NCBI RefSeq assembly: GCF_000315625.1
Contig: NW_005434640.1
Span: 318,270 to 382,269 of the forward strand
Length of the DNA: 64,000 bases
Source of the DNA: Guillardia theta CCMP2712
Taxonomy: Eukaryota; Protista; Cryptophyta
Reading direction: 5' to 3'
Shown: in pieces, positions 13,728 to 60,744 of the stretch
Position numbering within the stretch: the first letter of the stretch is position 1
Layout of the letters: each line of letters opens with the position of its first letter
Translations under genes and position numbers: made by a program
Notes under the pieces: model-generated
The model's input: only the letters and a program-made list of their open reading frames with translations
What the model was told of the DNA's origin: nothing
Database searches by the model: none

Positions 13728-16711
13728 TCAGAGCTGGTTGAAGGACGCCTGGCTCCTGTTCTCCTCATCATCATCCTCCGCCATCAGGTTCACCGCCAGC
13801 AGCCTGTCCCCCTCCCGCAGGCCGCTCTGGTACCCGATCCCCCCCTGCTTGATCCACTTGATCCTCGTCCCCTGCTCGTTGCTGTGCAGCTGCATTCCCA
13901 GCTCTCCTCCTCCTGCCTCGAGCTCGAAGCTCTTGACTCCCTTGTCTCCTCGCGCCACCAGCACCTGCACCTTCTGCCCCGCAGCCGCCCTCCTCCACGT
14001 CTCCGAGAAGGCTCTGCTCAGCCGGACAGCAGGGAAGGAGGAGGCCGTTGACGAGGCCCTGCTGAGCATGGAGCCGCCGAAGGACGCGGCGGCCCCGGCG
14101 GCTGACATGGCCCTGGACAAGGACTCGAGAGGGTTCTCGATCCGGAGGGAGGAGGTAGAAAACGTCCGCTCGATCTGCCCGAGGGACGAGCGGCCCGTCG
14201 GTTCCTTGAGCAGGAGCAGCCAGTGTTCCACCCCCTCCCGCCTGGCCCCCAGCAGGTGAAAGCCCTTCGTGCTCTCCTACTGCAATGTCAGCAAGAGTCG
14301 AGCTGGAAACCAGCTGGGGGCGGCGAGCTTACCTTGAAAGAGTGCACGACGTCTTCCTCCGAGAGTTCCTTCACCTTCCGCTGCCCAAGACCCACGATCA
14401 GATCCCCGACACAGAGCCCAGCAGAGGCCGCGGGGCTGCCCGGGTCGCAGCTGGAGACGACCGCAGCTGAGAACTTCCCCCTGCGGATGTGGATACCAAG
14501 ATCTTTGATCTTGCCCTTAGGGAGGTGCACGACAACTTTGACAAGAGGGAAGGAGGAGGAGGAGGAGGAGGAGGAGGAGGAGGGAGTGGGGAGAGAGGGC
14601 CCCGGCTGCTCTTCGCGGAGGACGAGAAAGACGAGGAAGGGGTTGTGGGACTCGTAGGAGGCCTCGAGAGTCTCCAGGAGGATGTAGCTGGAGATAGCTT
14701 CCTTCATCTCCCTTGAGCTCGGCGCCTCCAAGACCTTCCGGGGAAGAGACGTCACTTCTTCCCCGAGCTTCAGGCCACTGGTGCGGCTGCCGTCGGCGAT
14801 GTCGAGGACGACGAGTCGGCCGTCGGAGGATCGGATAAGGTCGATTCCCAGCTGCTGGCACTCGATGCGCACGGGGTTTGACAGGGGAACGTGCGGAGAG
14901 GCCTCGGAAGCAGTGAGGGGAGAGGCTCCTTCCGGAGGAGGAGAAGAGCGCTTGCCCAGACTCCCGTCGTCATCCGAGTGGACCTGGAGGGCTGGAAGCG
15001 CTTTCTGTCGCTGAAGGAGAGCTCGAGAAGGAGGATAGGCTGAGCTGGCCTCGTGCCCGGGCAGCCGCTGCATCATCAGAGCATCCTTCCCTTCCACATC
15101 CTCCTGCTCTGCCCCGAACGCTCCTTGGCCCTTGTCGCTTCCCCCGGAACGAGTAGGGTGGATCACCTCCTCAAGGATGCTACTCATCGTCACCTGCGGA
15201 TCTCTCGCCCATGACACGTTCTTCGGTGTCCTGCCAGGCCCTGACAGGCTCGTCAGAGGAGCGAAGGATGTGGAGGACGGCTCGGAGACAGCTGAAGGGG
15301 GAGGGTCCCGAGGCTTGGGCTTCTCCGGTTGGCTCCCTCTGAAGGAGTAAGCAGCTCTCTTCCTCTCCTGCTGCTCCTGATAGAAGAGAAGGTCCTCGTC
15401 CGTCGCATCGTCTGTCTGCAAGTCCCTCAAAGAGCCGCGGGTGAAGCTGCTCAGCTCCGGCTGATCCAGGTACGCCACAAGCTTCTGGCGGTGGAGGAAG
15501 CTGAGAGCAATCACGTGCTCGAGAGCGATGATCGCGCGCCTGTTGCTGAGCATGCTCGTGACGCACTTGAGATTCTTGCACATCCTCATGTCCTCTTTGA
15601 TCTGCTTCCTGCTCTCCTGCTTCGCCCAGTGACCGATGAAGTTGATGAGCTCTTCCCTCGAGTTGCAATGAATCACTTCTCGATGCGTCAGGTTGGTCAG
15701 GCTCTCCTTGTACTCCTGCAGCAGCTTCTTCGACCTGTCTGTCTCCAGGTGCTGTGACAAGCCTCTCGTCTCGTTCAGCGGAGAGTATCGAGAGGCAAAG
15801 ATCTCAGAGAGTGGCTGGGAGGAGCCTTCACGCAGCAGCTCCGCTTGCAAGCTCTGAACACAGAGGGGAGGTATCAAGATCTGGATCTCACGCTCGAGCA
15901 GCAGGTAGGGAGGTTTCTCCTGGCACATCTTTCTGATAGCATCGAAGACATCTCTAGGGCTCCCCTCCCTCGAGAAGAACACGTTCAGTCGGACTTTGAA
16001 GCAGCCGCCCTCGTCGGGGTCCACCGAAGAAACAAAGATGGCGTGGATGGGCAGCGAAAGGCTCTTCGCCACCCCCTGGGAAAACTCGTGGACCGACGAC
16101 CTCATGAAACTCTCAGCATCAAGACCGCAAACAGTCAAGGTGACCCTGATAACCTCGTTGCCCTCTGTCTTAGCCGAGCTCGCCCTTGACTGGATTGTGT
16201 GCTCGTACCCGCTCAAGACGCTGTTTGTCTTGATATCAGCTGAGGGTCTGTTGAGAGCTCTGTTCAAGTCGTCGATGAGCTTTCTGTTCTGCTCTTTGAT
16301 GTTGTCAAGGTCTATCTTGTTGAGCTCGTCTTGCATCGAATAATACTTCAACGAGCTGTTTACATTTGCATCCAAGGCATGTAGAACAGAGCTGCTGTAG
16401 CTAGTGCCCTTGGCATCTCCATCGCTGTATTTCTGCCTGTAGCTGTGAACGGGCTCGTTGGTGAAATCGACGACATCTCTTGCTCTCACTTCCGCCTCCT
16501 CCACCCTCGTCCCCTTCAGCTGCTGCAACTCGTCCCAGATCAAGTCCGATGTCGACCTTGATCCTCTTGCCTTCCACGTCGACTCTCCATCCCCTGCCCT
16601 GCCGCGTGTCTCGGCACGATCCTCTCTCCTGCTGCTCGTGCTCTCACCTCCTCCCATTCCCTTCGCTCTCATCGCCATTGTCGCTCGCCTCACTTCCTCC
16701 CGCACGTTCAT
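13728..16711 (-). CDS. Large protein with multiple PDZ domains; exons 14333-16711 and ~13728-14276
   Basis: DLGIHIRR..VVSSCDPGSPAASAGLCVGDLIVGLG and ELGMQL..IKWIKQGGIGYQSGLREGDRLLAVN are PDZ signatures. Intron 14277-14332 is in frame. Confidence 0.75.
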
Positions 16712-38017: not shown

Positions 38018-41000
38018 TTACATCAATCGTAAAGTAGAGGTGCTCGCAGAGTATCCGGGCTCCCCTTCCTTGCCCTTGAGCTTGAACTCGCTTTCGAGGC
38101 TCTTGGATTGCTGCCGTCGTTGTCCACGTGCTCTAAGAGCTGCAAGACACGGGTTGATCAGCTCGATGTCGCTCATGCCATCTGTTACCCTTCTTAGCTG
38201 ACGTTGGAGCAGATCAGGGAGATGGTGTATCATCATTCTTGTGGAGATGACGATCTCCTGTTAGAAATGTCGCAAGTCAGTCCTGGTGCCCGCAAGTCCA
38301 AGATGTCTCTGCCTCCATCTCCGTATGATGCATCCTTCTCAGCATCGGCATCGAGTGGCTCTTGTCCGTCTCGAAGAGGAACGCGCGGCCTGGGAGCCTG
38401 CGGTGCCAGTCAGGGGAGGAGGAGAGAGTCGTCGAGACGAATGCTCTTCGTCCTGACCTGAGCGCGGGCTGTATCGGCCCGCATGCGAAGATCTCGTGCT
38501 TGCTCTTGAGGGCATCATGACCCTCCCTTGGAGAAGGTCAGCGACATAGGGTAGGTAGGTTGTCCAAGGTTCGCCACCTTGATGAAGGATCGTAGAAAAA
38601 GTAGGACAGCAGGGAGGGGTTGACGCCTGACACCCACCGCCATGGCCCCAAGAACCACAAAACCTTGGTTGGCTGTCAGGCAAGCTTGCACAGAGGTCCT
38701 TCAGGTCGGTAACCTGCCACTTGGGTCGTCTGCAGAGGATCAGCAGCTCCAGCGCCCTGGTGCGTAACAGCTGCAGGCTCCGCAGAGACATTCGAGAGAT
38801 CATGTCCTCGCCAACTGCGATCTTCGTGGCGCTCAGGGCGAGCGAAGGGGCGAAAGGAGGAGCTACCGTCGTGATGAAGGGCTCGCAGCTCTCTGCGGCG
38901 GACCGGGAGAGCACAGGAGGGCAGGAGAGAGCGAAGCACTCCATGTCTTGATACACTGGGAGCTCCTCGGACCGGAGCATCAGAGACAGGATGCTCGCAA
39001 CCCCTGCTCCAAGCGAGTGCCCAACAACAACCTGCGACGTCTTCTAGTCACGAGCTGCCTCACAGCGCTAGTCAGAGTCTATCACCAGCCGGAAACCGCG
39101 GCAGGAGGGGATCTCGATCCCGCTCTTGACGAGTTCATGTGAAACGTGGTCTTCGGAGAGGAGGAGGGGGAGGAAGTTGGAGTCATGCAGGAGGTTCCTG
39201 AGCCTCTCCGCCGCCTGCACCATCCCAGCATGGCCGTAGGGCCCGTTCGACTCGAACTCAACCTGCTCATCAGCCAGCTCTTCCCCACCTCGATGCTCGG
39301 CCCCCAACCTGAGAACTCCTTGCACAAACTCTCTGACTCGGGCAGGCAGGAGGCAGCAGTGTGCTGTGCCATCGGTCAGCGTGTCGGAGATGGAAAAGGT
39401 TCCTCTGATCGCAAGGACCACCGACTTGAGCGTCCTGCAACCACTCAGTCACTCAGGGTACAACACGCGAGACACTGACAAGTCTGCCACAAGGAAGAAG
39501 GCAGGACTGAAGGCATCGGCCGGCGCCTCAAGAATGATGTGGTAGTCTCTTTCCTGTGCCTCCCGCTCCAGAGCTTTCTTGTCCACCCATCCATCCCCAG
39601 ATGACCTCGACAAGCACGTGCAGCACAGAATGTTCTGAAGGATCCAGCAGAACCCATCGCAGCAGTTTGAGCAGCATCGCCATACTTGAAGCATCATTCC
39701 ATAACATGCGATCGCATACGGGATGTACAGCTCCGCTCTCCTCAAGATCTCTATCGCTGTCTCATGCCTACCAGCATCCACATCCTCGCTCTGCCTGCTT
39801 GGCGGCTCTCGTGATGATGGCTGAATCGCTTCAGGAAGCTCTGCTGGGGACCTCGACATGTCAGGGGCAGAGACTGTCGCCGATGGCTCGTTGGATCCTT
39901 GACTTTGCGAGTCGCCTGCCGACGAGTTTGACCCGAGCGCGATGCTGCTGACAGTCGCAGTCATGAGAGCGGAAAGGAAACCGGGGGAGTCGAAGGAATG
40001 CAGACTTATATCTCCGGCATTCGCTGAGTGATGCTCCTCCACTTCTCCATCGACCGAATCTCCTCCAGTGATCCCCTCAGTTTCTGCTCCTGCCTGCGAT
40101 GAAAAACTATCCTCACTTACACCCTCCTCGATCTTCGAACGGTTGTCAACGTCTTCATGGTGATCGAGCAGGGTCGCTGGGCCTACGTGTTTGTTGTTCT
40201 CATCCTTGTGCGCGCTGCTCTCTGTCCTCTCGAACTGACCGTAGATGTCGTCGAGACATGAAGTATCGCTCACTGTTGACCACAAGTTGAGAAGCAGCAG
40301 CGCGGCGAAGATGTCGGAAGGCACCAAGTCCAATCCAGCGAACCAGGACGAGAGCGACTTGACGAGAGACCGGAGGGCGATCTCACGATCGTCTTCCCTC
40401 GGCATCAGGCAACAGAGAAAGTTGCACCTCCTCTCCCAGTGCCTGATGAAAGCAGAAGCATCAGCGGCGAGGAGTGAGAGAAAGTGCTACCTGTGCAGCT
40501 TGTCGATGTCAGCCACATCGACATGGCCAGAAAGATCGAAGGCGAACAAGACGCCAGCACACATCCATCCTATGGTGGCTATCGATATCCAGACTATCAT
40601 GCGCAAGAATGCTTCTCCCTCACGCTCATGCTCCGGCGAGTCGCCCTTGCACTCCAAACTTGGGGACAGGAAGACGATCGCGGCCCATGCCGTCCAGGCA
40701 GCTTCGAGGAGCGAGACGAGGACATGCACGAGCACGAGAGTGCTGACGGGCCTTCTCGATCGCTCTTCCATGATCCTGCCCTTGGAGGAGGAGATAGCGA
40801 TGAGAGCCTCGAGGAAGCATGTCGCGCCCATGAGGAGGATGATGCCGTACACGTAGAGATCGATGCATCGCTCCACAAAGACGGCAGGGCACCAGTCTGA
40901 GGAGCACGAGATGTCCCCTGACAGGGTGTAGTGGAAAGCTATCAGGGTGCCGAGCAAACAGGCGCGGAGGAAGGAACCAATGGCTGCTGGGAGAACGAGA

Positions 41001-41050
41001 TCGTCGCTCCCGACAAGCCATGCCCGACCAAGTAGCCTCAAGGCAGGCAT
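38018..41050 (-). CDS. DAGL: sn-1-specific diacylglycerol lipase (DAGL-like, lipase class 3 with N-terminal TM helices)
   Basis: MPALRLLGRAWLVGSDDLVLP matches the DAGL N-terminus. Also SSSKGRIME, VLAIRGTFSISDTLTD, GHAGMVQAA, nucleophile motif GHSLGAG (~39005-39025) and CFALSCPP. Confidence 0.85.
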
Positions 41051-41543
41051 GCATGCATCAACGTCGTCCTGAGCACAAGTCTGCGCAAGTTTTGCACACG
41101 GGTCTGATCTCCTGCTCAATCTCTCAGCGAGTGAACTTGAACAGTCCTAGGCCGCTCGCTACCTTCTACACTGCCTCTGCCTCTCCTCCTCTCCTCCTCT
41201 CTCCTCCTCTCCTTCCCTCTCCTTCCCTCTCCTTCCCTCTCCTTCCCTCTCTCCTCTCCCCACAACACTCCACTCCATCTCCCCGCTCACCTTCATTCCA
41301 ATCTACACCCTCAGGGTTTTCGGTCCTCAACGTACTGGTAACGGTTTGGTAGCTGTGGCGGAGTGGAATGGAGAAGAACGAGAGGAGAGAAGGAGAGGCA
41401 GAGAGGTTGGAGGAGAGAGGAGAGGAGGAAGGAGAGGAGGAGAGCATGAGATAGTATGGAGGACTGACAGGAGGAGGGCGCTCAAACATTCCTTTTGCTG
41501 TCTATTCTCGCAACCACGAGGGAGCATAGATCCAGTCCGCCTC

Positions 41544-43146: not shown

Positions 43147-46100
43147 TCAAACCTCTCGATGCGTAAGGCTGTACGCAACTTGTTTGAAAGTCTCCACTAG
43201 CTGCAGGCCCTCGAACTGTTACAGGAGTCAGGGATCAGCAATTTCAATCCTGAAACTTACAGCTTGCAGTAGTGTGCCCCCTCCTTGCACAGCCAGCGCA
43301 GACAGCTTGTCTGTCTGTGCACCTTGTCCAAAGGCAAGGGTATGAACCTTGAGATGCTCTCTGTACTCATCAGCGATTGTCTGAGGGAAGAAGTTAGCAG
43401 AAGAGTTATGAATGAGCAGATTGTTCACTTGATACCTTCATCTCCCTTTCTCCGTCGTTGCTTTGACCATCGGACATGAACAACAGGAAGTTGTGATAGG
43501 CCTTGACATCTGAATCTTCTAACACGTGCAAAGCACCTTGCAAGCCTTGTGCAAACGAGGTCCCCCCACCTGGATTGATGTTGTTTAAGCAATCATGAGG
43601 ATTGCTGTCCACTGACATTCTTTGACATGCGATTTGAAAGGAACGGTTGAACACAATGATAGAGATAATGTTTTTGTTGCTATGATCCTTCATGATCTCA
43701 ACAAACTTGTCAACTGCATTCTTGAGATCAATCCATTGCTGTCCACACATTGATCCAGATTGATCAAGTACAAGAATGGAATGGTGATACTCTGGCTTCT
43801 TCCTCATACTTCCTGGATCAACCAACACCGACTCTTCGGATGTTTCCTCCAGCAGCTTTCTTGCCTCTACGAAGTTCTTCTGTTTCACATACTCGGCTAT
43901 TCTGAGTGTTCTGTTGTGTTTTTCTATTCCTTCGGAGTGTCTTTTCCCTAACAACTCGTATTTGTCGGCCAAGGCTTTTGCCCTCTTTTTCTTGAGATAT
44001 TCCGTCCAGTCCAAGCCTGTGGATTCCTTGTCGACGTTGGAGGCCTCTAAGTACCCGAGCTCGTCTTCGAACAGGATGATCTTGGTAGAGCCTGGGTCAT
44101 CTTGCCTGCATGTCCGACCGAAGATCTGCTTTTCTTCTGACTCATCCTCAGGAAGAAAAGTTGTCAAAACGTGCACGCCTCCGTATTTGACAAGTGCTTT
44201 GTCAAAGCAAACAAAGTCAGTCCCTCTGCCGTAGGCCCTTGTCATGAGAGTTACGGTGAAGGGCCGGATGGCCTTTTGAATGTTCGATTGTCGCTCAGCG
44301 GGGCTCATCTCGTCCAAGAGCTCGAGGAACCCGTGATACTGGTTGATGTTTGGTTTTTGTTTGTTCAATTCTTCAGCAAATCTTCGCAGAGAGTTGATGT
44401 CTTTGAAAATCACAAGTATGGCTCTTCCAGAAATCAGCTTTTGTTCAATGTCTCGACGGACTTGCAGGAAGAAATCGTTCCACTCTCCGACGACAACTTC
44501 CATCGTTTCCTGTTGTGCTGGCTTCTTCTGAAAGGTGGAGGGCAGAAACGTCTTGTTCTGAAATTTGTATTCTTCAAGCAGCTTGGTCTGAGCACTTGTC
44601 AAGCAGTCCAAAGTTCCCGTCATTCCCAGACAGGCTGCATAGCACTTTGGAATCTGAGAGTAGAGCAGCTCGCCACATACTGGGGAGATATGGAGGAAAC
44701 GCATAACTTTGTCCAACTGCAGCTCTTTTGTATTGTGGACACAGTGCAGATACGTGAAAGTCGTCACATACCCAAGGGTGGCAGCAAAGTTGGGGACACC
44801 GCTGACGGGATCGATATAACCTATCTGCTGCTTGTTCTTGTCAACGACGTGTTGTGGCAAGTCTGGTACATCTAGACCAGAATCCGACGCAAACAGTTCG
44901 AGAGCATTAAGCATCTTCTCAAACTCAACTTCGAGCATTCTGGTTGTGAGAAAGGGAAACACTAGCTGCAAATCTTTTGTCTCTTGGCGACTCAAGAGTC
45001 CTTTGATGATACTGGATGAGTTCTTTAGATGATACCGTTGTTGCCACATGTAGTCGATGATAGGATAGCTCGGATGATCTGTCATGCTAGGTAAGAAAAG
45101 ATCTTGTTGCGGCCTGTACAGCTTTCCATAGAAATTCTCACTAAAGAACACGTCGACCTCGTCCATGAGCAAGATTGATTCGCGTTGACTAGATGATGTC
45201 CTGCTCTTAGAGCTCTGAGTCTTTAGAATGGGTAGGAGATTCATACACTGGTGTAACCTGCCTTGAATACTACTTTGATGGCAAAGAATCTCATGATAAA
45301 TTCGCCTCATGTCTGCGAATTCAGTTGGAAAGAGAGAAGATTTCATTATCTTCGATGACAAGATGTCGAAGTTGGAATAGCTGACATGTTCTTTCACATT
45401 TAGCTCGTTAAAGATTGCTTCAAAAGCCTGTTCGTCTCTCTTCGACAAATATTCACTATAACAGACCACGTCAACTCGAAAGCCCAATTTTGCCAGCACG
45501 ATTGCTGTAAAACCCAGGGCCAAGGACTTTCCTTCTCCTGTGTTGATCTGAATCAGATGATTGCCCAAGCTGCTCTGATCTAGGCCGAGGAGTCTGAGGA
45601 TGCCGAGGATCTGAGCGCTGTGAGGCTGACGGACTTTGTTCTTCTCCACTCCAATCTGATCAGCAGGAATCGACAAAAATGTCCAGTGACCGCAAATCAG
45701 ACCTAGGAATCGTCCGAAATCTTTTGGGACTTTTGATAAACGTGTTGCGTTGGATTTGAGTTGGTTTGCAAGAGAGTCGATCTCTTCAAGTATACTTGAC
45801 TTCTTCTTGCTGTAATCGTCTCTGTTGCTGATCACCCTATTCACGATCTTATCGTAGGTATCCTTGAACTCTTTGTAACAATTCATGAGCTTGTTATTGT
45901 TTGAGTTTGCAGGTTCACATTTCAAGTTCACGAGGGCCATGCCAAATCTGACAGCCCCTGCCTTCTCATTGAACATCTCAACGCTGAATATTTCAAACTG
46001 AGGAAATGTAGAGAGAATGAATTGAGCTTGTTCAGCCACAGATGACAATCGACTGTTTTCGGCGTTGGCATATTCCTTGAGTAAAACTCCTAAATGGTAA

Positions 46101-49100
46101 AGATCGTCACCTTTCAAATGTTTCAGAATTTCATCTGTGACAAAGGTCTTGAAGTCTTCAATCAAATTCAATTCTGAACAAACACCACAGCTCTTGATCA
46201 AGAGCTTGGCTAATATCTTCTCGGATTCTCTTCTCTTCGCTGAGATCTTTGCAGAATTTTCCAAGCTCTTTCTGAAATGCTGTATGATATCGGTTATTCG
46301 CTGTTGGGCTTCGGTGACAAATCTCTGCTTGGGTTCCTCTATCTCTGGGAACTTGAGCTTTAAAGTAGAAAAGACTTTGCAGAAATGTCTGAGTTCATTG
46401 AATTCCAGAAACCTTTCGTCTTTGATGTCACGATGAATTTCTTCTTTGACGTCTTCAATTTTTTTGCTGATCCAGTCCTTTACACACTTCCTCAGTCCAT
46501 CAAGCTCCAGGTGTATGTTATGTTCTTTGAGGCGGACTTGAAGAAACTCTAACATGCTGAAACGATCTACCAGCGGAAGAAGCTTGTTGCCTGATATGAA
46601 ATCTTCGATAATCTGCGGGGATTGCAAAGACTGAAGGTGAGGCTGCAGATGTAAGATACAATCACGATACAGATCTGACATTGCCCCTTGAGTATCTCTG
46701 AGCTGCTCGATAGCATGGACAAGCTCCTCCTGATCGTTGCGGTTGTGGTTTGCGAGACCACCTACAAGCATACTGATTCTCTGCACGAGCCGTTGCATCG
46801 CCTCCCTTTCGCATTGTTTCTTCGCTCTTTCTTGCATCCTGCCAACTGCAAGTTGCAGCTCCTGGATCCTTGAATCGAACATGCATGGCCAATTCTCCTT
46901 ACAATGTTCCAGGTTGTGACGGATTCTAGAGATGGTGTTGTTATCAATACCGACACTCGCGAGCTTATCAATGCAATCAACGTCGAACGTGAATTCGCAG
47001 AGGAGCTCACGATGTTGTTTCTCCATGTCAGAATCCTCAATCTCTTTGATCAAGAGTCTAAAGTCTTGCTCGGCTTTTTCTTGCTGACGGAGCACAGTGG
47101 TCTGAAAACGTTGAATGTCATCTTTGATCTTTGAGACCATGTTCTCCCTCATTTTATCAAATTCGTCGATGACTTTGCCTGTCGGCACTTGTGCAAGCTT
47201 TTTTAATTCTTTCTTGCACTCGGCATACACCGCAGACGTCTTGTGATGTAGGAGTTGTTCAAGATAGTCATCGCCTGATCTCAGGATCTCACGAGCAATG
47301 TTTCCCTTGTCCTTCTGAAATTCTTGTTCAAAATTCTTCAGCTCCTGCTGCATTTTGCATCGAATTTCTTGAATCTTGGAATTTGCTGTCAAATTCTGCA
47401 AGAATTCGTTGACCTCTTCAAAGATGTCGTCGTATAGTTGAGAGTCTTTGGATTTGAGTCCTTGTAGTAATTCCCTCAGTTGACTGACGGGAGTTTGAGA
47501 AAAGCCATATTGCTTCAAGCAGCTCAAATCTCCAAGCCTTGGTGGATTGCTAAGAATATAAGCAAAACGGTCTGCAACAATTTCAGACTGAGAGGATTTC
47601 AGCCTTTCCATGATTGAGCTAAATTCAAATCTTTGCAGCCTGCGACCACTCTTTTGCTCTTTCAGAAATGATTCAGCCGCTTCTATCAACTTTGAAGTAA
47701 GCTCTGTCTTCAAGCCGGTCAACTTCTTGATCTCAACAGTAATGCCAGGAATATATCTAAGTTTGTTCAGCGTGCTCATCTTTTGGTCATGCTTGACCAC
47801 ACCTTTGACGAGCTCCTTCTCTACCATTGACTTCTTTGCCATGATCTTTTCAGCCCATTCCTGCATGTCTAGCATCATGGTCTCTTTGACTTTTTCATAG
47901 CCTTCTGTAATCTTTGAGATGACTTGTTGTGCTGTAGCGCGGGCAAAGAGTTTTTCCAAGAACTCGTTGATTTCATTCATACTGATGTCGTACTTGGACT
48001 TGTCGATCCTCTCAAGCTGATCAAGCAGGCTCATCAGCTCTGTCACAACACTTCCATTGAAATTGCACTCGCGAAGTTTCTTCAATTCCTTCAAGTCCAT
48101 GGGATAGTGAAGAATATTGATGATTGCTTCAAACGAAGATTTCACGATCTCTTGAGAATCTCGTTTGAGTTTCTCAATATTTGCTGCAACTCGTTCATCT
48201 ATATCAGCTTTCTGTCTGTTAAGCTTGGCAACACAGCCTTGGGCAACAGAACAGAGATCTCTGATCATTGTTTTCTCACGTTGCTTCAAGGATTGCTGTA
48301 ACGATCTTCCATCCTGCAAATCACTTTTCGTTTCGATAAATTGCCATGATGTACTGTACATCGAATCCATGGACATTTTGTTGTGCAAATATTCTGGAAA
48401 ATTTTCTTCTGGAACAAGAGCGGTCTCTTTTTGGTGGAGATCTTGTTGCTCTGAAGTGTAGAACTTGTTGTAATACTCCTCCAACCTTTCTTCGATTTTG
48501 TTCAGTTTTTGCTTCACCGCCTTCAGATAGATTTTCTTGTAAATTTTCTGTAATTCTCTGGATTTTTCGTCATGCAGTTCAGGATATTCAGATTGAAATA
48601 CGGACAGAATTTCCCAAACTCCCAGGGTTTGGAATGCCTTGACCTGCCAATTGAAGAGTTACTCTAATCATATTTCAGCAATTTTCAGAGAGATTTGACC
48701 TGAGGAGTATCTTGGACCTCCAACGTTTTGTCACTGAAGATGTCGAACTCCCTCTCTACCACCTGCAAGGCCTCGTCTCGTAGGGCCCTCAGCGCGATGT
48801 CAAAGTTTCGAGCTAGAGTGACTTTCCTGCAATCCTCAACTTGCTCTTTGAACAGAGAGACAATGTTTTGTGAAAACGTCCCAATGATCCCGTCTAGGGG
48901 AAGCTGATCGCCAAACAAGAAATACCTCTTGCTTTGCCTCATCGCTTGCAGCTTTTTGGCCTCCTCCAAGTGATTTGACAAGGTTTGACATTGTGGAAAA
49001 CTCGAGAATTCATCTAAGAATGTCTCCAATGTAGTATCTGATTCTCGCGGATAGAACTTGTTCGGTTGCTTTTGAGCCAAGTCGCAGACATGAGATTTAA

Positions 49101-50794
49101 CTTGCAGGAAACAAGTCTCGAGGTCAAATCTCACCTGGGTCTGCTCTCTTTTCTGCTGGTTCATTTCCTCTTGTCGTATTTGCGACTCAGATCTCGCAAA
49201 ACAAGCTCTGAGGCCAGTCAAACCCTCCATTGCACCCTCAAGCTCCTTGGCTTTTTCCATAATGATGAGATACTTTCTAAGACAGCGCCTTGCTTTTCTT
49301 GAAAAGTCTGTTTTCCATGAGTTGATGGCTAATTCCCACATGTGAAAGATGTCCTTGATCTGCTTGGTTATATTGTCCATGCTCTCGTCTATCACTGGAG
49401 TCTTGATGACTTGAAAGTTTTTCAGCTTGTCGAGGAGATTCATCACTTCCGCTAGATCTCCAGCACGCAGAGCCTTGGAGATATCATAGCGAAAGACGAA
49501 ACCGATTCTTGACAGGAGGTAGATATCGTCTTGGTTCAAAGGAGGTCGGAACACGTCTTCTCGCACACTGACAGGTGGCATGTTTAACAGCCTGTTGATC
49601 AAGGCTTCACGCGACATTCCTTCGGGATGTCGGTTGAGAGGGTCGTAGATCTGAATGATGTCTTGGTTTCCATCAAGATGCAACCCCGCATCTTTCATCA
49701 TATTGACAAGACAGTTCCTAAGAACATGGAGAGGCTTGAGTTCTGAAGCTGCCTTGGTCACGCAGCATAAGATGCTTTTAATGTCGGCTTGCACCCATCG
49801 CTCCTCTCCGAAAAGTTTCAGCAAAACCTTAATCGTGTCCTTGATGATGGATCCTCGACTTGAAAACAGTGATTTTGCATCGAGAACCAGGACCATCGCT
49901 AGTCCTCCTCCTCTAGACCATGTGAGCAGTTTGCAGAGATTAACAGCGTTGGCAATGTTCACTTCGGATCCGTTTGTGTCCTCAAAACCAGGAGCATCCC
50001 ACAACGTGATCGGAATTCCATTGAGAACGATAGGATGCAGCAGCTGCGTTTCTGAGGTGTTGAACTTGAATCCGATATCAGTGACTGAATCCATCGGCCC
50101 GCCTTCGCTTACAGGAACAACACAGAGAGAGCTTCCAGCGTTCATCATATCAATGTGAGTGTCTTCTTCAGTCACAAGTCTGAGTTGACATCCAGCCAAG
50201 CTGTTTGTGAGTGTGCTCTTTCCGCTCCCCGTGACTCCGACAATCACCACATTGCGTTTTCCCTCCAGCGCGGCCTTGTCAGGGAGGAGGCTTTCAGACA
50301 ACTGTTGCAAGATGTTAGATATACTCGATCGGATCTTGTCTTCATCTCCAGACAATTTCATCTCGAGTAGCCCCGATAGTGAGTCAGGTTCTTCACTCTC
50401 ACTCTCAGAATAGTCTTCCACTGCTTGGCCGAGAGATGGTCTAGACCAGCTGAAAGCTGAGACGGCATGATCTGATTGTACGGATTCACGCTTGATGATG
50501 GAAGCTGCCATGTTGTTTCTCGATGCCCCTTTGTCGTTCTGGCGTTGTGCACTTCTTGAACATTCTGGACTGGAAACATACAACTCACTTTTCTGTCTCT
50601 TGACATGGGTGGTCCTTCTGTGTTCGTGGGATGGGGTATCAGCATATGGTTCTAAAATCGATATTCGTGAGTCAACGACATGTCAATTAGAGAGCAAACG
50701 TTTACTCACCTTCTTGTCGTCTGTTCTTCTTCAAAGATCTCTTGTCATCATCTGGTTCGTCTTTGAGAGGCTCATGGCGATCAGCCCATGGCAT
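43147..50794 (-). CDS. ~2,477-aa fusion: P-loop GTPase + helical/coiled-coil stalk + SecA-like SF2 ATPase + vWA; exons 50710-50794, 48700-50651, 43436-48643, 43261-43380, 43147-43215
   Basis: GTPase: GVTGSGKST, WDAPGFEDT, VTKA. SecA motifs: INTGEGKS, VCYSEYLSKRD, DEVD, GMTGTL, GRGTDF, GGVHVL, QIFGRTCRQDDPGS. vWA: LDQSGS, GGTSF, MSDG. All four 45-58 nt GT-AG introns preserve frame. Confidence 0.85.
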
Positions 50795-57300: not shown

Positions 57301-60300
57301 CTGGGAGAAGGAAGGTATCTTCACTTGATGCGTTCTTTCTGTCCACCTTTCTGCCCCTGGCACACCTGACGCTCACTTGATCTCCACCGATGTGGAACTT
57401 TCATCCACTGCTTCCCCTATCTTCTCGATCCTCGGCTCCTTGATGATGCCTCCGGCAGCTTGACTACCTACAAGGAACTTTGTACAGTCGCAAACGAGTT
57501 GGGGCAGGTCGGAATTTGATTTTTGACTCCTTCCCTCGCCCTGTTGTTCAACTCTCACATGGTTCCTTCCAGCCAGAGCTTATCTACAGGTTCCTCAACC
57601 TTTCAGGACATCAGAAGGTCAGGGCATACGAGTCTTGTTTGTCGATGCTTTTGCCTTGTCGATGCCTCTGCGCATACCCGTTGATCTCACCTATCCATTT
57701 CTCTGTTCAGATGTGGAACTCCAAGAGAGGAGCTGCTTTTGGCTTCTCCTCCATAGCATCCAAGGTGACCAATGCTGAGAATCTGCCATGTCCATGACTA
57801 TCAATCAGGCAACAGACAGGCTGAAGCCGCACCTTCCAAAGCTGATCCCCAAACTCTACAGATACCAGGTTGAAAAGGATGGATAATCCTGCATTTACAG
57901 AACGAGCTGATTCAACCATCCAGTTTGATCCCAACGAGAAGATCCAAGAAGCGATGACGAACCTCTGGCTGGTCGTTGTTGAGGATTCTGAGAAGGCCAA
58001 GGAAGCGTATCTACAAGACATCCTGGCTGATCTCATTCCTTCTGTTGGCTCTCGTCTGGTATTCTCGCCCTCACTTCTGTGGCTGTTTCCTAGTCCTATT
58101 CCTCCTCCTGCTCCTCCTCTACCTACCATGCTGCAACCCATCGCCGTTGCGAATTGCTGAATCTCAGACCCATCTAGTGGAGGGTACGGCAGGCGTCTTG
58201 TCTGGCACTTGCGGACATTCTTGCCAAAAGGAAGTTCGAGCAGATCGAGACGAATCTGGTCTGGTGCCCTTATGACTTGGGTAGAAAGTGAACGAGGGAT
58301 GTAGGTGGAGATGTACCGCATGAGCTTGAGGGCCGTGGACGACGTGAAGGAGACGGTGAGGATAGCAGGAGCGAGCTTCAACCGGTCGGTCTTCGGCCTT
58401 GCCTCCCGACTCGCCGATCCCTCTCAGAGCGGCGAGAGCGTCGCCGGCAAGGTAGATGCGCGCATCAGCTGAGAGATTCCTTCGTGTGATTGAGTGTGAA
58501 ATTTGTTTTGTGAACTTTGCGGCGGTTTTAAACCTGTACCAATGACCGCTCGATATCCAAATTTCTCTTTACAATGCAACGACCTGAGGCTGAAACGTAC
58601 GTGATGTCCAGGTGTTGGGACTGATCCTTCCGTTCCTACTCAAGGAAGGAATCTCAAGGTCAGTGCATTCTGTTCCATTCCTCAAGTTATGATGTGTCAA
58701 ACAGCTCGGCCAGTGAAGTTCGCGCATTGAGCATCTCCCAGCTGGTCAAGTTCACCAAACATGCTGGAACAAGTTTGCGCCCGTTCATCCCCGAGCTCTC
58801 GCTGGTGCTGCTGGAGAGCTTGTCCTCGCTGGAGCCGCAGGTGAGCAAGGAGGGGAGGGGATGCTTCCAAGGGAGGAGAGGATGATGGATGAGTAGATGA
58901 ACACATACTTGCAACTGAATGCGGAGAAATTCGACGTGGCTGGAGAGGTCACTCTTCACCGCACACGCTTCATTCATTGACTGGTTGACAAGCAGACAGT
59001 CGAGCGCGCACGGCTCTCCGCCTCTCGCAACTCTCCCATGGCAGACACGCTTGACATGTGCGTGCGGTACATGAACGGAGAGGCTGCCGAGGAAACGATC
59101 CCGAAGCTCGTCCACGTCATTCAGCATGGCGTCGGCCTTCCCACCCGCTGCGGCGTCGCTAAGTTTGTGAGCCAACTCTGTCTCATCCAGCAGGAGGTCC
59201 CAGCGGTTCTCCGGAAGCACTCTAGCAGGTTGCTCAGAGCTCTGTGCTCTGCCTTCTCCGACCGCAGGTAGATGCGTTCACAACTCCTGCTCTCCATCAT
59301 TCACTTCTCGTGCAGCACGGTAGTTCGGCAGGCCATGGCAAGTGCCGCAGCGAGGGTGGCAGGCGTGTCGAAAGAGAACAACATCGAAGAGTTCGTTCTC
59401 AACATGAGGAAGATGTACGTGGACAAGGGGATGGACGATGCCGCGCTGCGAGCGACGATCGGAGTGGCTCTCAAGGAGCTGGTACTTCAGGCCAGAGACA
59501 GTTCGAGCGTTAGCATGCAGAAAGTGATTCCGCTGGTGATCGTGGGGAAGGAGGACGAGGACGAGGCATCTCGGTCACAATTCCTGACGATCTGGGAGGA
59601 GAGCGTTGGGTCGTTACACACAGCGTTGAGGATGTACGGGGAGGAGATCATCGAGTTCGTGGAGCTCTGCTTTGCCTCCTCCTCGTGGCTGCTCAGGAAG
59701 ATGACGGCCAAGGCCTCCGTCTTCCTTGTGTCCTCCAACCCTCACGCCCAAGTCGCTGACATCTCCAGGGCACAGAGCGCGAGAAAGCTGCTCCCAATCC
59801 TCGTGCAGAACATCCAGGCAGCGAGGATCTGGGACGGGAAAGAGAATGTGCTGCATGCCATTGCTGCTTCGGTCGTAGCCATCGACTTGTTCGTGGATAA
59901 GCAGGGAGGGGACGGATCTGAGCTCCAGCTGGAGGGATGGAGCAAGGAGGGCGAGGGAGCTGGCGATCTCTCTCGGACGCATGTTGCCCGTGTCTTGATC
60001 GCGGAGTGCATGAGAAAGAAGCGAGCATATCGGCTGGAGGCTTTGCGAGCTTGCACAAGAATGCTCACGGCGCTGAAGACCAGCCTGAACATCTGGCAGG
60101 ATGTTCTCACGGCAGTGAAGGATGTGATTCTGAACCCGCAGGAGAGAAAGGAGGAGGAGGTGCGGCAGACGGTCTCTGGGGGAAGAAGCGAGGAAGAGGA
60201 GCAGCACTACGACGCTATGATGGAGACCAAGTCTTACGCAGAGCTGAGGACTTGTGCGCTAGAGACTCTCGTCTCAGCATGGATTGTCGACTTTGACCTT

Positions 60301-60744
60301 GCAAGCGCCATGCTTCCCGACTTGCTCAGGGCGCTGCAAGACTACAGTCACTCGGTGATGGTCGAGGAGAAGCAGGCGGCAGTGAGCATGATGCGCAGGA
60401 TCGCGGAGAAGTTGTCGGAGGAGGAGAGCCTCGGGATGTGGCAGTCGCTCAGTGGTGCCGTCATGGACGGTCTCTCCTTCTGCATTGAGGTCAACGGGCC
60501 GCAGCTCCGTGACGTGCAGATCGCTGCCGTCGCTGCCTGCAACAAGTGGCTCGAGCTATACTCAAGGTTCGCGGCTAGCAGGATGGAGGAGGACGGGGAC
60601 GGCAACCAAAGGGAGGGGCAGACAAAGGCGCTTGCTCGTCTCATGCACATCGTGGAGGAGCTTCTCAAGGATCAGACGGACATCAACTTCAAGTCTGCAC
60701 TCAACTCGTTGCACGCCAGCTTGCGGGGCGCGCAGGGAGTTTGA
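51393..60744 (+). CDS. ECM29: Proteasome adapter and scaffold protein ECM29 (HEAT repeats), highly fragmented into exons; start approximate
   Basis: N-terminal [26 protein letters not shown], then [66 protein letters not shown] and [11 protein letters not shown]. Confidence 0.9.
54115..54190. repeat. (CTGCTCTTG)n intronic 9-mer repeat
   Basis: Visible tandem repeat. Confidence 0.9.

What the first reader, a model, noticed from the sequence alone, without database searches (positions are those of the whole stretch)
43147..50794. Giant GTPase-stalk-SecA-like ATPase-vWA fusion protein: candidate undescribed eukaryotic defence or protein-remodelling machine
Seen: the 632-aa and 1703-aa ORFs join in frame across a 56-nt GT-AG intron (48644-48699). 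Three more short introns add an N-terminal exon and complete the vWA domain, giving ~2,477 aa. Domain order is a TRAFAC-like GTPase (G1 GVTGSGKST, G3 DAPG, G4-like TKA), ~1,200 aa of helical/coiled-coil sequence, an ATPase with all diagnostic SecA motifs in order (TGEGKS, YLSKRD, DEVD, GMTGT, GRGTD, GGVHV, QxxGRxxRQxDPGS), and a vWA with intact MIDAS (DQSGS..T..D). Established: bacterial/plastid SecA threads polypeptides through SecY using C-terminal scaffold/finger domains, and cryptophyte plastid genomes encode their own secA. Here those domains are replaced by vWA and there is no signal or transit peptide, so this is not the translocase. Inference: GTPase (AIG1/GIMAP/dynamin-like) + NTPase + vWA combinations typify biological-conflict systems. 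A plausible model is that vWA captures a target, the SecA motor unfolds or extracts it, and the GTPase plus stalk oligomerise on membranes, e.g. against viruses or parasites. SecA-like domains do occur in other eukaryotic proteins, so the novelty is this full architecture.
Basis: partly seen in the sequence, partly recalled or inferred. Interest (0 to 1): 0.9.

Follow-up and report, generated by a model that had tools for sequence, protein, structure and literature searches.

The report
Giant GTPase–SecA-motor–vWA fusion protein
An alga carries an intact gene for a 2,477-residue protein that joins an immune-type GTPase, a motor derived from the bacterial protein-export ATPase SecA and a swappable grabbing domain; the design is shared by many protists and by bacteria that live inside eukaryotic cells, and I found no study of what it does.

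Summary
In detail: five exons give an open 2,477-aa frame in a cryptophyte-like nuclear genome. Intron 2 sits at the same codon in two paralogues, intron-free homologues align up to it, and a 95%-identical wild relative gives dN/dS 0.39. RNA data showed no expression. The ATPase keeps every SecA catalytic residue, the PPXD clamp fold and the long scaffold helix, but lacks the wing and two-helix finger; a separate canonical SecA exists in the genome. It belongs to the eukaryotic SecA-like clade noted in 2013, function unknown. The architecture is a family trait: of 124 long homologues, 82 carry the GIMAP/Toc34-like GTPase, 72 a vWA and 43 both, in protists and in Chlamydiae, Legionellales and other host-associated bacteria; no viral hits. 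New here: two vWA types are swapped between sister genes, the stalk has a ~193-aa repeat, and the eukaryotic subclade has NLS-like N-termini. Best guess (0.45): a GTP-gated, vWA-aimed polypeptide-pulling machine used in host-symbiont conflict; the defence role and membrane step are inferred only. I found no paper describing the fusion. The scan noted two other copies in this genome.

The parts
50710..50794 (-). Exon 1 (ATG at 50794), hydrophilic N-terminus, no signal or transit peptide evident
   Evidence: ATG and frame kept in wild relative L131
50652..50709 (-). Intron 1, 58 nt GT-AG
   Evidence: 15.5% divergent in L131 against about 4% in exons
48700..50651 (-). Exon 2: disordered N-terminus, GTPase, start of helical stalk
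50590..50601 (-). NLS-like KRQK (aa 46-49)
   Evidence: K[KR]x[KR] in 7 of 13 subclade N-termini against 1.6 expected by shuffling; inference only
49612..50271 (-). GIMAP/Toc34-like TRAFAC GTPase (aa 156-375): G1, G2 Thr and G3 intact; G4 lacks the usual Asp
48644..48699 (-). Intron 2, 56 nt GT-AG, phase 0, joining the GTPase and SecA ORFs
   Evidence: same position in C50 and C26 paralogues; 4-nt insertion inside it in L131
43436..48643 (-). Exon 3: stalk, SecA-like motor, most of vWA
47081..48235 (-). Two degenerate ~193-aa helical repeat units (aa 816-1008, 1009-1200); a weaker third unit at aa 629-815
   Evidence: hhalign 97%, E 3e-11, in register; reversed control 0.15%
45851..46525 (-). 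Conserved helical region preceding the motor (aa ~1386-1610)
   Evidence: matched in 194 collected sequences, not in the Wolbachia/arthropod sister group
45146..45850 (-). SecA NBD1 (Q motif, Walker A, YLSKRD, DEVD)
44666..45145 (-). PPXD-like clamp domain (aa ~1846-2005) with family-conserved IGY and GYxTxFAY motifs
44051..44665 (-). GMTGT linker and NBD2 (GRGTD, GGVHV, QxxGRxxRQ)
43883..44008 (-). Long scaffold helix (42 aa), equivalent to the SecA HSD long helix; no wing or two-helix finger follows
43150..43789 (-). C-terminal vWA with intact MIDAS (DQSGS, T, D), split by introns 3 and 4
43381..43435 (-). Intron 3, 55 nt GT-AG
43261..43380 (-). Exon 4
43216..43260 (-). Intron 4, 45 nt GT-AG
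43147..43215 (-). Exon 5 with stop codon

Best explanation
A soluble, possibly nuclear, single-chain protein-remodelling machine used in conflict between eukaryotic cells and intracellular invaders or symbionts. Shown: an active-site-complete SecA-type ATPase with its clamp domain and long scaffold helix, an intact GIMAP/Toc34-like GTPase, a variable-length helical repeat spacer, and a MIDAS vWA placed where SecA has its SecY-contacting wing and finger. Inferred: the vWA docks a target protein through its metal site; the PPXD/two-strand clamp grips an unfolded segment; NBD opening and closing pulls it to unfold it or strip it from a complex; and GTP-dependent dimerisation of the GTPase licenses or localises the motor. 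Swapping the vWA changes the target. Hosts would use it in defence, endosymbiotic bacteria as a host-directed effector.
For: All B. subtilis SecA nucleotide residues named by Dong 2023 (Q85, K106, D207, E208, D492, Q521, R525, R528; PMC9926265) align to columns invariant in 86 family members. AF2 model pLDDT 90; best matches are SecA, Z 28.9 over 526 residues to substrate-engaged 6itc against Z<=20.5 over ~325 residues for RNA helicases; several SecA alignments end near B. subtilis 617-619. PPXD hairpin and stem motifs align with SecA's and are conserved. GTPase fold closest to Toc33, GIMAP4/7 and EngB, with IRG and mitofusin also hit. vWA type A, type B or none differs between sister genes: C34/C50/C26, P0010/P0011. 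N-terminal add-ons include ankyrin, LRR, Sel1, kinase, U-box and SidM-like nucleotidyltransferase domains. Named prokaryotic hits are mostly Chlamydiae, Legionellales, Rickettsiales, Coxiellaceae and Amoebophilaceae. Three intact copies plus one broken copy, purifying selection, no transcripts in the culture runs tested.
Against: No biochemical or expression evidence at all. The clamp's PP-loop arginines and the two-helix finger are not conserved, so processive pulling without a channel is unproven. Only four copies, not a large expansion; omega 0.39 with no sign of positive selection. Some 'no vWA' or 'no GTPase' calls may be truncated gene predictions. No partner or target is known in eukaryotes.
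Confidence: 0.45

Rival explanations
1. Housekeeping or stress-related complex remodeller working like midasin/Rea1 (motor, long linker, MIDAS vWA that pulls a factor off a nuclear particle).
For: Same overall layout as midasin (from my knowledge); NLS-like motifs; purifying selection; a Baffinella transcriptome protein P0339 shows that a homologue's GTPase part is expressed.
Against: Patchy distribution, shared with host-associated bacteria, vWA swapped or lost between paralogues, one copy dead, no reads in culture RNA.
Confidence: 0.17
2. Nucleic-acid or RNP translocase: the SF2 motor acts on RNA or DNA in the nucleus (anti-virus or anti-transposon).
For: SF2 fold, RIG-I/DinG/DEAD-box structural neighbours; loss of the two-helix finger; NLS-like motif.
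Against: Retains the PPXD insertion, which in SecA forms the polypeptide clamp, and in SecA the NBDs do not touch substrate directly (PMC9926265). Helicase matches are much weaker than SecA matches.
Confidence: 0.15
3. Self-translocating toxin or effector: the SecA-like unit threads the protein's own domains, or partners, across a membrane, as proposed for giant Omnitrophota and actinobacterial proteins.
For: Those proteins also lack wing/scaffold parts (bioRxiv 10.1101/2023.11.21.568195; PMC8195603). Four bacterial loci have a TPR gene directly downstream that could be an effector chaperone.
Against: No TM segments, signal peptide or toxin domain in the algal protein; Omnitrophota proteins have many TM helices.
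Confidence: 0.13
4. Membrane-coating immunity GTPase (IRG/GBP/GIMAP-like) whose stalk oligomerises on vacuole or pathogen membranes, with the motor extracting proteins there.
For: GIMAP, IRG and mitofusin fold neighbours with a following helical bundle.
Against: No TM or evident lipid anchor; G4 Asp absent; NLS-like motif. It overlaps with the best explanation except for location.
Confidence: 0.07
5. Non-functional relic of a gene acquired from an endosymbiont.
For: GC3 0.52 against 0.60-0.76 in eight neighbouring ORFs; no RNA seen.
Against: 7.4 kb open frame, dN/dS 0.39 (Fisher p 9e-7), invariant catalytic residues, ancient paralogues with saturated dS.
Confidence: 0.03

Closest known systems
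Eukaryotic SecA-domain clade of Duplouy et al. 2013 (PMC3639933), wBol1_1091 type; also in phage WO eukaryotic association modules (PMC5062602)
   Same: Same strongly supported clade in the tree: 100% SH-aLRT, long stem, with 1,495-aa Wolbachia and bee/spider proteins as sister group. Giant length, no SecA_SW domain, swapped between eukaryotes and endosymbionts.
   Different: The Wolbachia/arthropod proteins lack the GTPase and vWA; the paper gives no domain architecture or function for the protist members.
Canonical SecA/SecA2 translocase ATPase
   Same: NBD1, PPXD, NBD2, long scaffold helix; all nucleotide-binding residues.
   Different: No wing or two-helix finger, PP-loop arginines lost, fused to GTPase, stalk and vWA; NCBIfam 65 bits against a cut-off of 862; the genome's canonical SecA on C232 groups with cyanobacterial/plastid SecA.
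Amoebophilus APD effectors (Zhang et al. 2012, PMC3482391)
   Same: GIMAP-type GTPase and SecA-like helicase-related domains listed as modules of endosymbiont effectors.
   Different: Listed as separate variable domains; no GTPase-SecA-vWA fusion is described in the passages found. The Amoebophilaceae hits here fall in the other SecA-like subclade.
AIG1/GIMAP-Toc34-septin GTPases
   Same: Fold, SxT G2, DxPGFxDT G3; GIMAP4 is the best PDB sequence match without G1 (E 0.016).
   Different: G4 Asp missing, no TM anchor, below the Pfam AIG1 cut-off, embedded in a 2,500-aa motor protein.
Midasin/Rea1 and MoxR-vWA (VMAP) systems
   Same: NTPase motor plus MIDAS vWA adaptor logic (midasin from my knowledge; the VMAP paper PMC7159879 came up but was not read).
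   Different: Those motors are AAA+ rings; this is an SF2/SecA motor plus GTPase in one chain. An analogy, not homology.
Giant Omnitrophota/actinobacterial proteins with SecA-like domains (bioRxiv 10.1101/2023.11.21.568195)
   Same: SecA DEAD and preprotein-binding domains kept, wing/scaffold domain lost, coexisting with canonical SecA.
   Different: Many TM helices and carbohydrate enzymes; no GTPase-vWA layout noted in the passages read. Relationship to this clade not tested.

Membership tests
Canonical SecA translocase | NBD1/NBD2 catalytic residues (Q motif, Walker A K, DE, D492, Q521, R525, R528) | tested here: met
Canonical SecA translocase | PPXD clamp domain inserted in NBD1 | tested here: met
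   Fold and position met. PF01043 not hit, PPXD-only profile match weak (E 0.02), and PP-loop arginines not conserved.
Canonical SecA translocase | Helical wing and two-helix finger (SecA_SW) | tested here: not met
   No PF07516; vWA starts ~30 aa after the long helix
Canonical SecA translocase | Groups with bacterial/plastid SecA; passes family cut-off | tested here: not met
Canonical SecA translocase | Works with SecY in a plastid or bacterium | not testable with these tools
   No targeting peptide evident; a canonical SecA with a hydrophobic leader exists on C232
Eukaryotic SecA-like clade (Duplouy 2013) | Clade apart from prokaryotic SecA that contains insect and Wolbachia giant proteins | tested here: met
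   The match of P0046 to wBol1_1091 is inferred from length (1,495 aa = 4,488 nt), not from an accession.
Eukaryotic SecA-like clade (Duplouy 2013) | Very long proteins with a SecA domain in the C-terminal half and protist hits | tested here: met
AIG1/GIMAP GTPases | G1, G2 Thr, G3 DxxG and TRAFAC fold | tested here: met
AIG1/GIMAP GTPases | G4 with guanine-specifying Asp | tested here: not met
   TKAA in the query; Asp in 10 of 78 family members at that column
AIG1/GIMAP GTPases | Pfam AIG1 gathering score | tested here: not met
   25-26.7 bits against 27; 5 of 78 members hit AIG1 at E<=0.001
AIG1/GIMAP GTPases | Conserved-box arginine finger and GTP-dependent dimerisation | tested here: inconclusive
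   R/K in 70 of 78 at a similar place after the strand; equivalence not shown by alignment
vWA domain | MIDAS DxSxS...T...D | tested here: met
MoxR-vWA / midasin systems | AAA+ motor | tested here: not met
   The motor is SF2/SecA
Known prokaryotic defence systems (PADLOC) | Full-length match to a system model | tested here: not met
   Only weak partial hits in exon 2 (LeoBC 6e-5, mad8, mad3, LeoA); none in exon 3

The most novel reading that the evidence does not exclude
A widespread, undescribed class of single-chain conflict machines in which a SecA clamp motor has been freed from the SecY channel and re-aimed by exchangeable vWA domains under the control of a GIMAP-like GTPase. It would be used by protist hosts and by their intracellular bacteria against each other, possibly in the nucleus: a monomeric SF2 protein unfoldase acting in innate immunity.
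Probability: 0.35. Interest if true: 0.88.

Novelty: new variant of a known kind. Interest (0 to 1): 0.66.

Why it matters
SecA is known only as a channel-coupled export motor. This family (546 clusters at 50% identity with E<1e-30) keeps the clamp but has lost the finger and wing, so it is a natural test of the clamp-driven model of SecA and of whether a SecA motor can remodel proteins without SecY. It also points to a possible immunity or effector system in protists, where few are known, that is exchanged with Chlamydiae, Legionellales and Wolbachia. The algal genome offers three intact paralogues with different C-termini (type A vWA, type B vWA, none) for comparison.

Tried and rejected
Separate genes: rejected by conserved intron position and single-ORF homologues. 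Plastid SecA: rejected by tree, missing SW domain and a separate canonical SecA. Bacterial contamination: rejected by spliceosomal-type introns, eukaryotic neighbours (ECM29-like, PDZ) and a subclade whose named members are all eukaryotes. Viral or transposon cargo: no viral-contig hit, no terminal repeats, upstream DNA unique. BLAST self-comparison missed the stalk repeat; profiles found it. PPXD-only profile match to SecA is weak (E 0.02). The careful tree did not finish, so support values are SH-aLRT from quick trees and the direction of transfer is unresolved. Ten literature searches found no paper on the fusion; the library lacks most subscription journals. The NLS pattern was partly chosen after seeing the sequences, so it was repeated with the standard K[KR]x[KR] pattern. 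Searches were coordinate slips, corrected.
Full report
Gene model. The window lies in an 87.1-Mb, 669-contig nuclear assembly; size and intron style match the cryptophyte Guillardia theta from my memory, not from a tool. Five minus-strand exons (50794-50710, 50651-48700, 48643-43436, 43380-43261, 43215-43147) give 2,477 aa with all quoted motifs. The joining intron lies at the same codon in paralogues on C50 and C26 (57 and 53 nt). Homologues encoded as one ORF (P0001, P0005) carry GTPase and motor together, and P0005 and P0007 align up to the junction. A metagenome contig 95% identical over window 50854-47501 keeps the ATG and both introns, with a 4-nt insertion inside intron 2. It gives 52 synonymous and 76 non-synonymous differences over 1,060 codons, dN/dS 0.39, p 9e-7. 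RNA gave nothing. Two RNA-like contig sets had no match. The 27 raw reads were second mates of about 18-20 nt, inferred from depth per bin and a mean record length of 38.6, which is within chance. Expression is neither shown nor excluded.

Handling note. All database, family and fold searches were made exon by exon, by reference; the joined search and the full-length fold were left out. The joined translation was built only inside scripts, to check the frame, number residues and compare locally with sequences already fetched. The broken C145 copy was only located, not mended.

Motor. An 86-row alignment of the ATPase region has invariant Q, TGxGKS, LxxxD, DExD, RGxD and QxxGRxxR columns. These align to the SecA nucleotide residues listed by Dong et al. 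2023 (PMC9926265). The AF2 model (pLDDT 90, pTM 0.90) matches SecA structures first (Foldseek 2e-19; VIA Z 28.9, 526 aligned, rmsd 5.8 to 6itc), well above RNA helicases (Z<=20.5, ~325 aligned). About 155 residues between DEVD and GMTGT correspond to the PPXD: the hairpin and return strand align with SecA's in a profile comparison and carry family-conserved IGY, GYxTxFAY and CG..Y.E.P motifs. A 42-residue helix after NBD2 matches the long scaffold helix; vWA follows, so wing and two-helix finger are absent. The PP-loop arginines are not kept. Dong et al. report that the clamp moves the chain by main-chain hydrogen bonds while the finger hardly moves, so a finger-less motor that still grips polypeptide is plausible; this is inference. 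The genome has a separate canonical SecA on C232 with SecA_PP_bind and SecA_SW domains and a hydrophobic leader, grouping with cyanobacterial/plastid SecA.

GTPase, stalk, vWA. G1, G2 (SxT) and G3 are near-invariant in 78 homologues; G4 is TK without Asp. The model (pLDDT 94) is closest to GIMAP7 by Foldseek and to Toc33, GIMAP4 and EngB by VIA (Z about 14, tied), so GIMAP/Toc34-like is a resemblance, not membership. The stalk holds a degenerate ~193-aa repeat (97% probability, in register; reversed control negative), and paralogue C26 lacks about 557 aa of it, roughly three units. Between paralogues the enzyme domains are 53-62% identical and the stalk 23-41%, with saturated dS. The vWA has a full MIDAS. 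Two vWA types occur in the family, DxSxS and DxTGSM (VWA_4-like). C34 has the first, C50 the second (19% identity) and C26 none detected. The same switch separates close sisters P0010 and P0011. A K[KR]x[KR] motif lies in 7 of 13 N-termini of the eukaryotic subclade (1.6 expected) and in 3 of 11 bacterial ones (1.9 expected), a hint of nuclear import.

Distribution. The motor finds 546 clusters at E<1e-30. Among 124 long members, 82 have the GTPase, 72 a vWA and 43 both (truncated gene calls may lower these counts). Named eukaryotes: Baffinella (genome protein and a transcriptome fragment), Picozoa, MAST-4, Hexamita, spider, bees. In GTDB the 78 loci returned are mostly Chlamydiae, Legionellales, Coxiellaceae, Rickettsiales, Holosporaceae, Amoebophilaceae and unclassified Gammaproteobacteria. 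Six carry GTPase-motor-vWA, one on a 2.9-Mb contig, and four loci have a TPR gene directly downstream. No viral hit. In quick ML trees the protein lies in a clade with a long, 100%-supported stem. Its GTPase-less sister group holds Wolbachia and arthropod proteins of about 1,500 aa. The nearest 18 rows (100%) have only eukaryotes among named members, and their sister group only bacteria. The direction of transfer is not resolved. GC3 is low for the region (0.52 against 0.60-0.76).

Known background. Duplouy et al. 2013 (PMC3639933) described a eukaryotic SecA-domain clade in insects, Daphnia, Tetrahymena, Polysphondylium and Salpingoeca, transferred into Wolbachia and Amoebophilus, with no function. 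Bordenstein 2016 (PMC5062602) lists SecA in phage WO modules. Zhang 2012 (PMC3482391) lists GIMAP-type and SecA-like domains among Amoebophilus effector modules. None of the passages found describes the GTPase-stalk-SecA-vWA protein. The scan's earlier notes on two other copies in this genome agree but are not independent evidence.

Verdict. A real, selected gene and a real, uncharacterised family. It is a member of the eukaryotic SecA-like clade, not a translocase. The conserved GTPase-motor core, exchangeable vWA tip, variable repeat spacer, birth and death of copies and sharing with intracellular bacteria favour a conflict role; the kept clamp favours a protein substrate. Best model 0.45; rivals are a midasin-like housekeeping remodeller 0.17, a nucleic-acid motor 0.15, a self-translocating effector 0.13, a membrane-coating GTPase 0.07 and a relic 0.03. 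Novelty: new variant of a known kind; interest 0.66.

Noticed in passing
G000:C50:455346-464468 (L008/L009, minus) and G000:C26:610248-616918 (L011, plus): Intact paralogues of about 3,020 and 2,200 aa with an extra ~600-aa N-terminal domain, shared between them and without a Pfam hit, that the window gene lacks.
   Followed up: partly
G000:C145:116300-121030 (L014, minus): Broken fourth copy with stops and frame changes, type A vWA.
   Followed up: partly
G000:C126 (L124:5041-7896, L125:1025-4081) and C3 (L126:2325-5441): Three ~1,000-aa ORFs with the same GTPase family but no SecA motor nearby; the two on C126 are a divergent pair. Related GTPases on C7 (with ankyrin repeats) and C23 (AIG1 plus lipase 3).
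   Followed up: partly
G000:C232 (L123:2673-5702, minus): Canonical SecA in the nuclear assembly with a signal-peptide-like leader ending EA-F, grouping with cyanobacterial/plastid SecA; cryptophyte plastid genomes also encode secA (from my knowledge).
   Followed up: partly
L039:6413-6964, L045:10348-10968, L046:10773-11300, L053:11131-11739: A ~180-200-aa TPR gene abuts or overlaps the end of the motor-vWA gene in four bacterial genomes: possible chaperone, sensor or immunity partner.
   Followed up: partly
L030, P0156 and relatives: Some long family members carry N-terminal SidM-like/DUF294 nucleotidyltransferase, ankyrin, LRR, kinase or U-box domains; single tails carry kinase, PARP or DnaJ domains.
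   Followed up: no
L044, L047: Wolbachia wCon has one gene from each of the two SecA-like subclades side by side, as in wBol1; L047 has a second giant ORF directly downstream.
   Followed up: no
window 38339-41119 (minus): Multi-exon gene whose N-terminus resembles diacylglycerol lipase (from memory; no Pfam hit on the pieces tested).
   Followed up: no
window 59272-60744 (plus) and 14288-16711 (minus): ECM29-like HEAT protein and a PDZ-domain protein: ordinary eukaryotic neighbours.
   Followed up: partly
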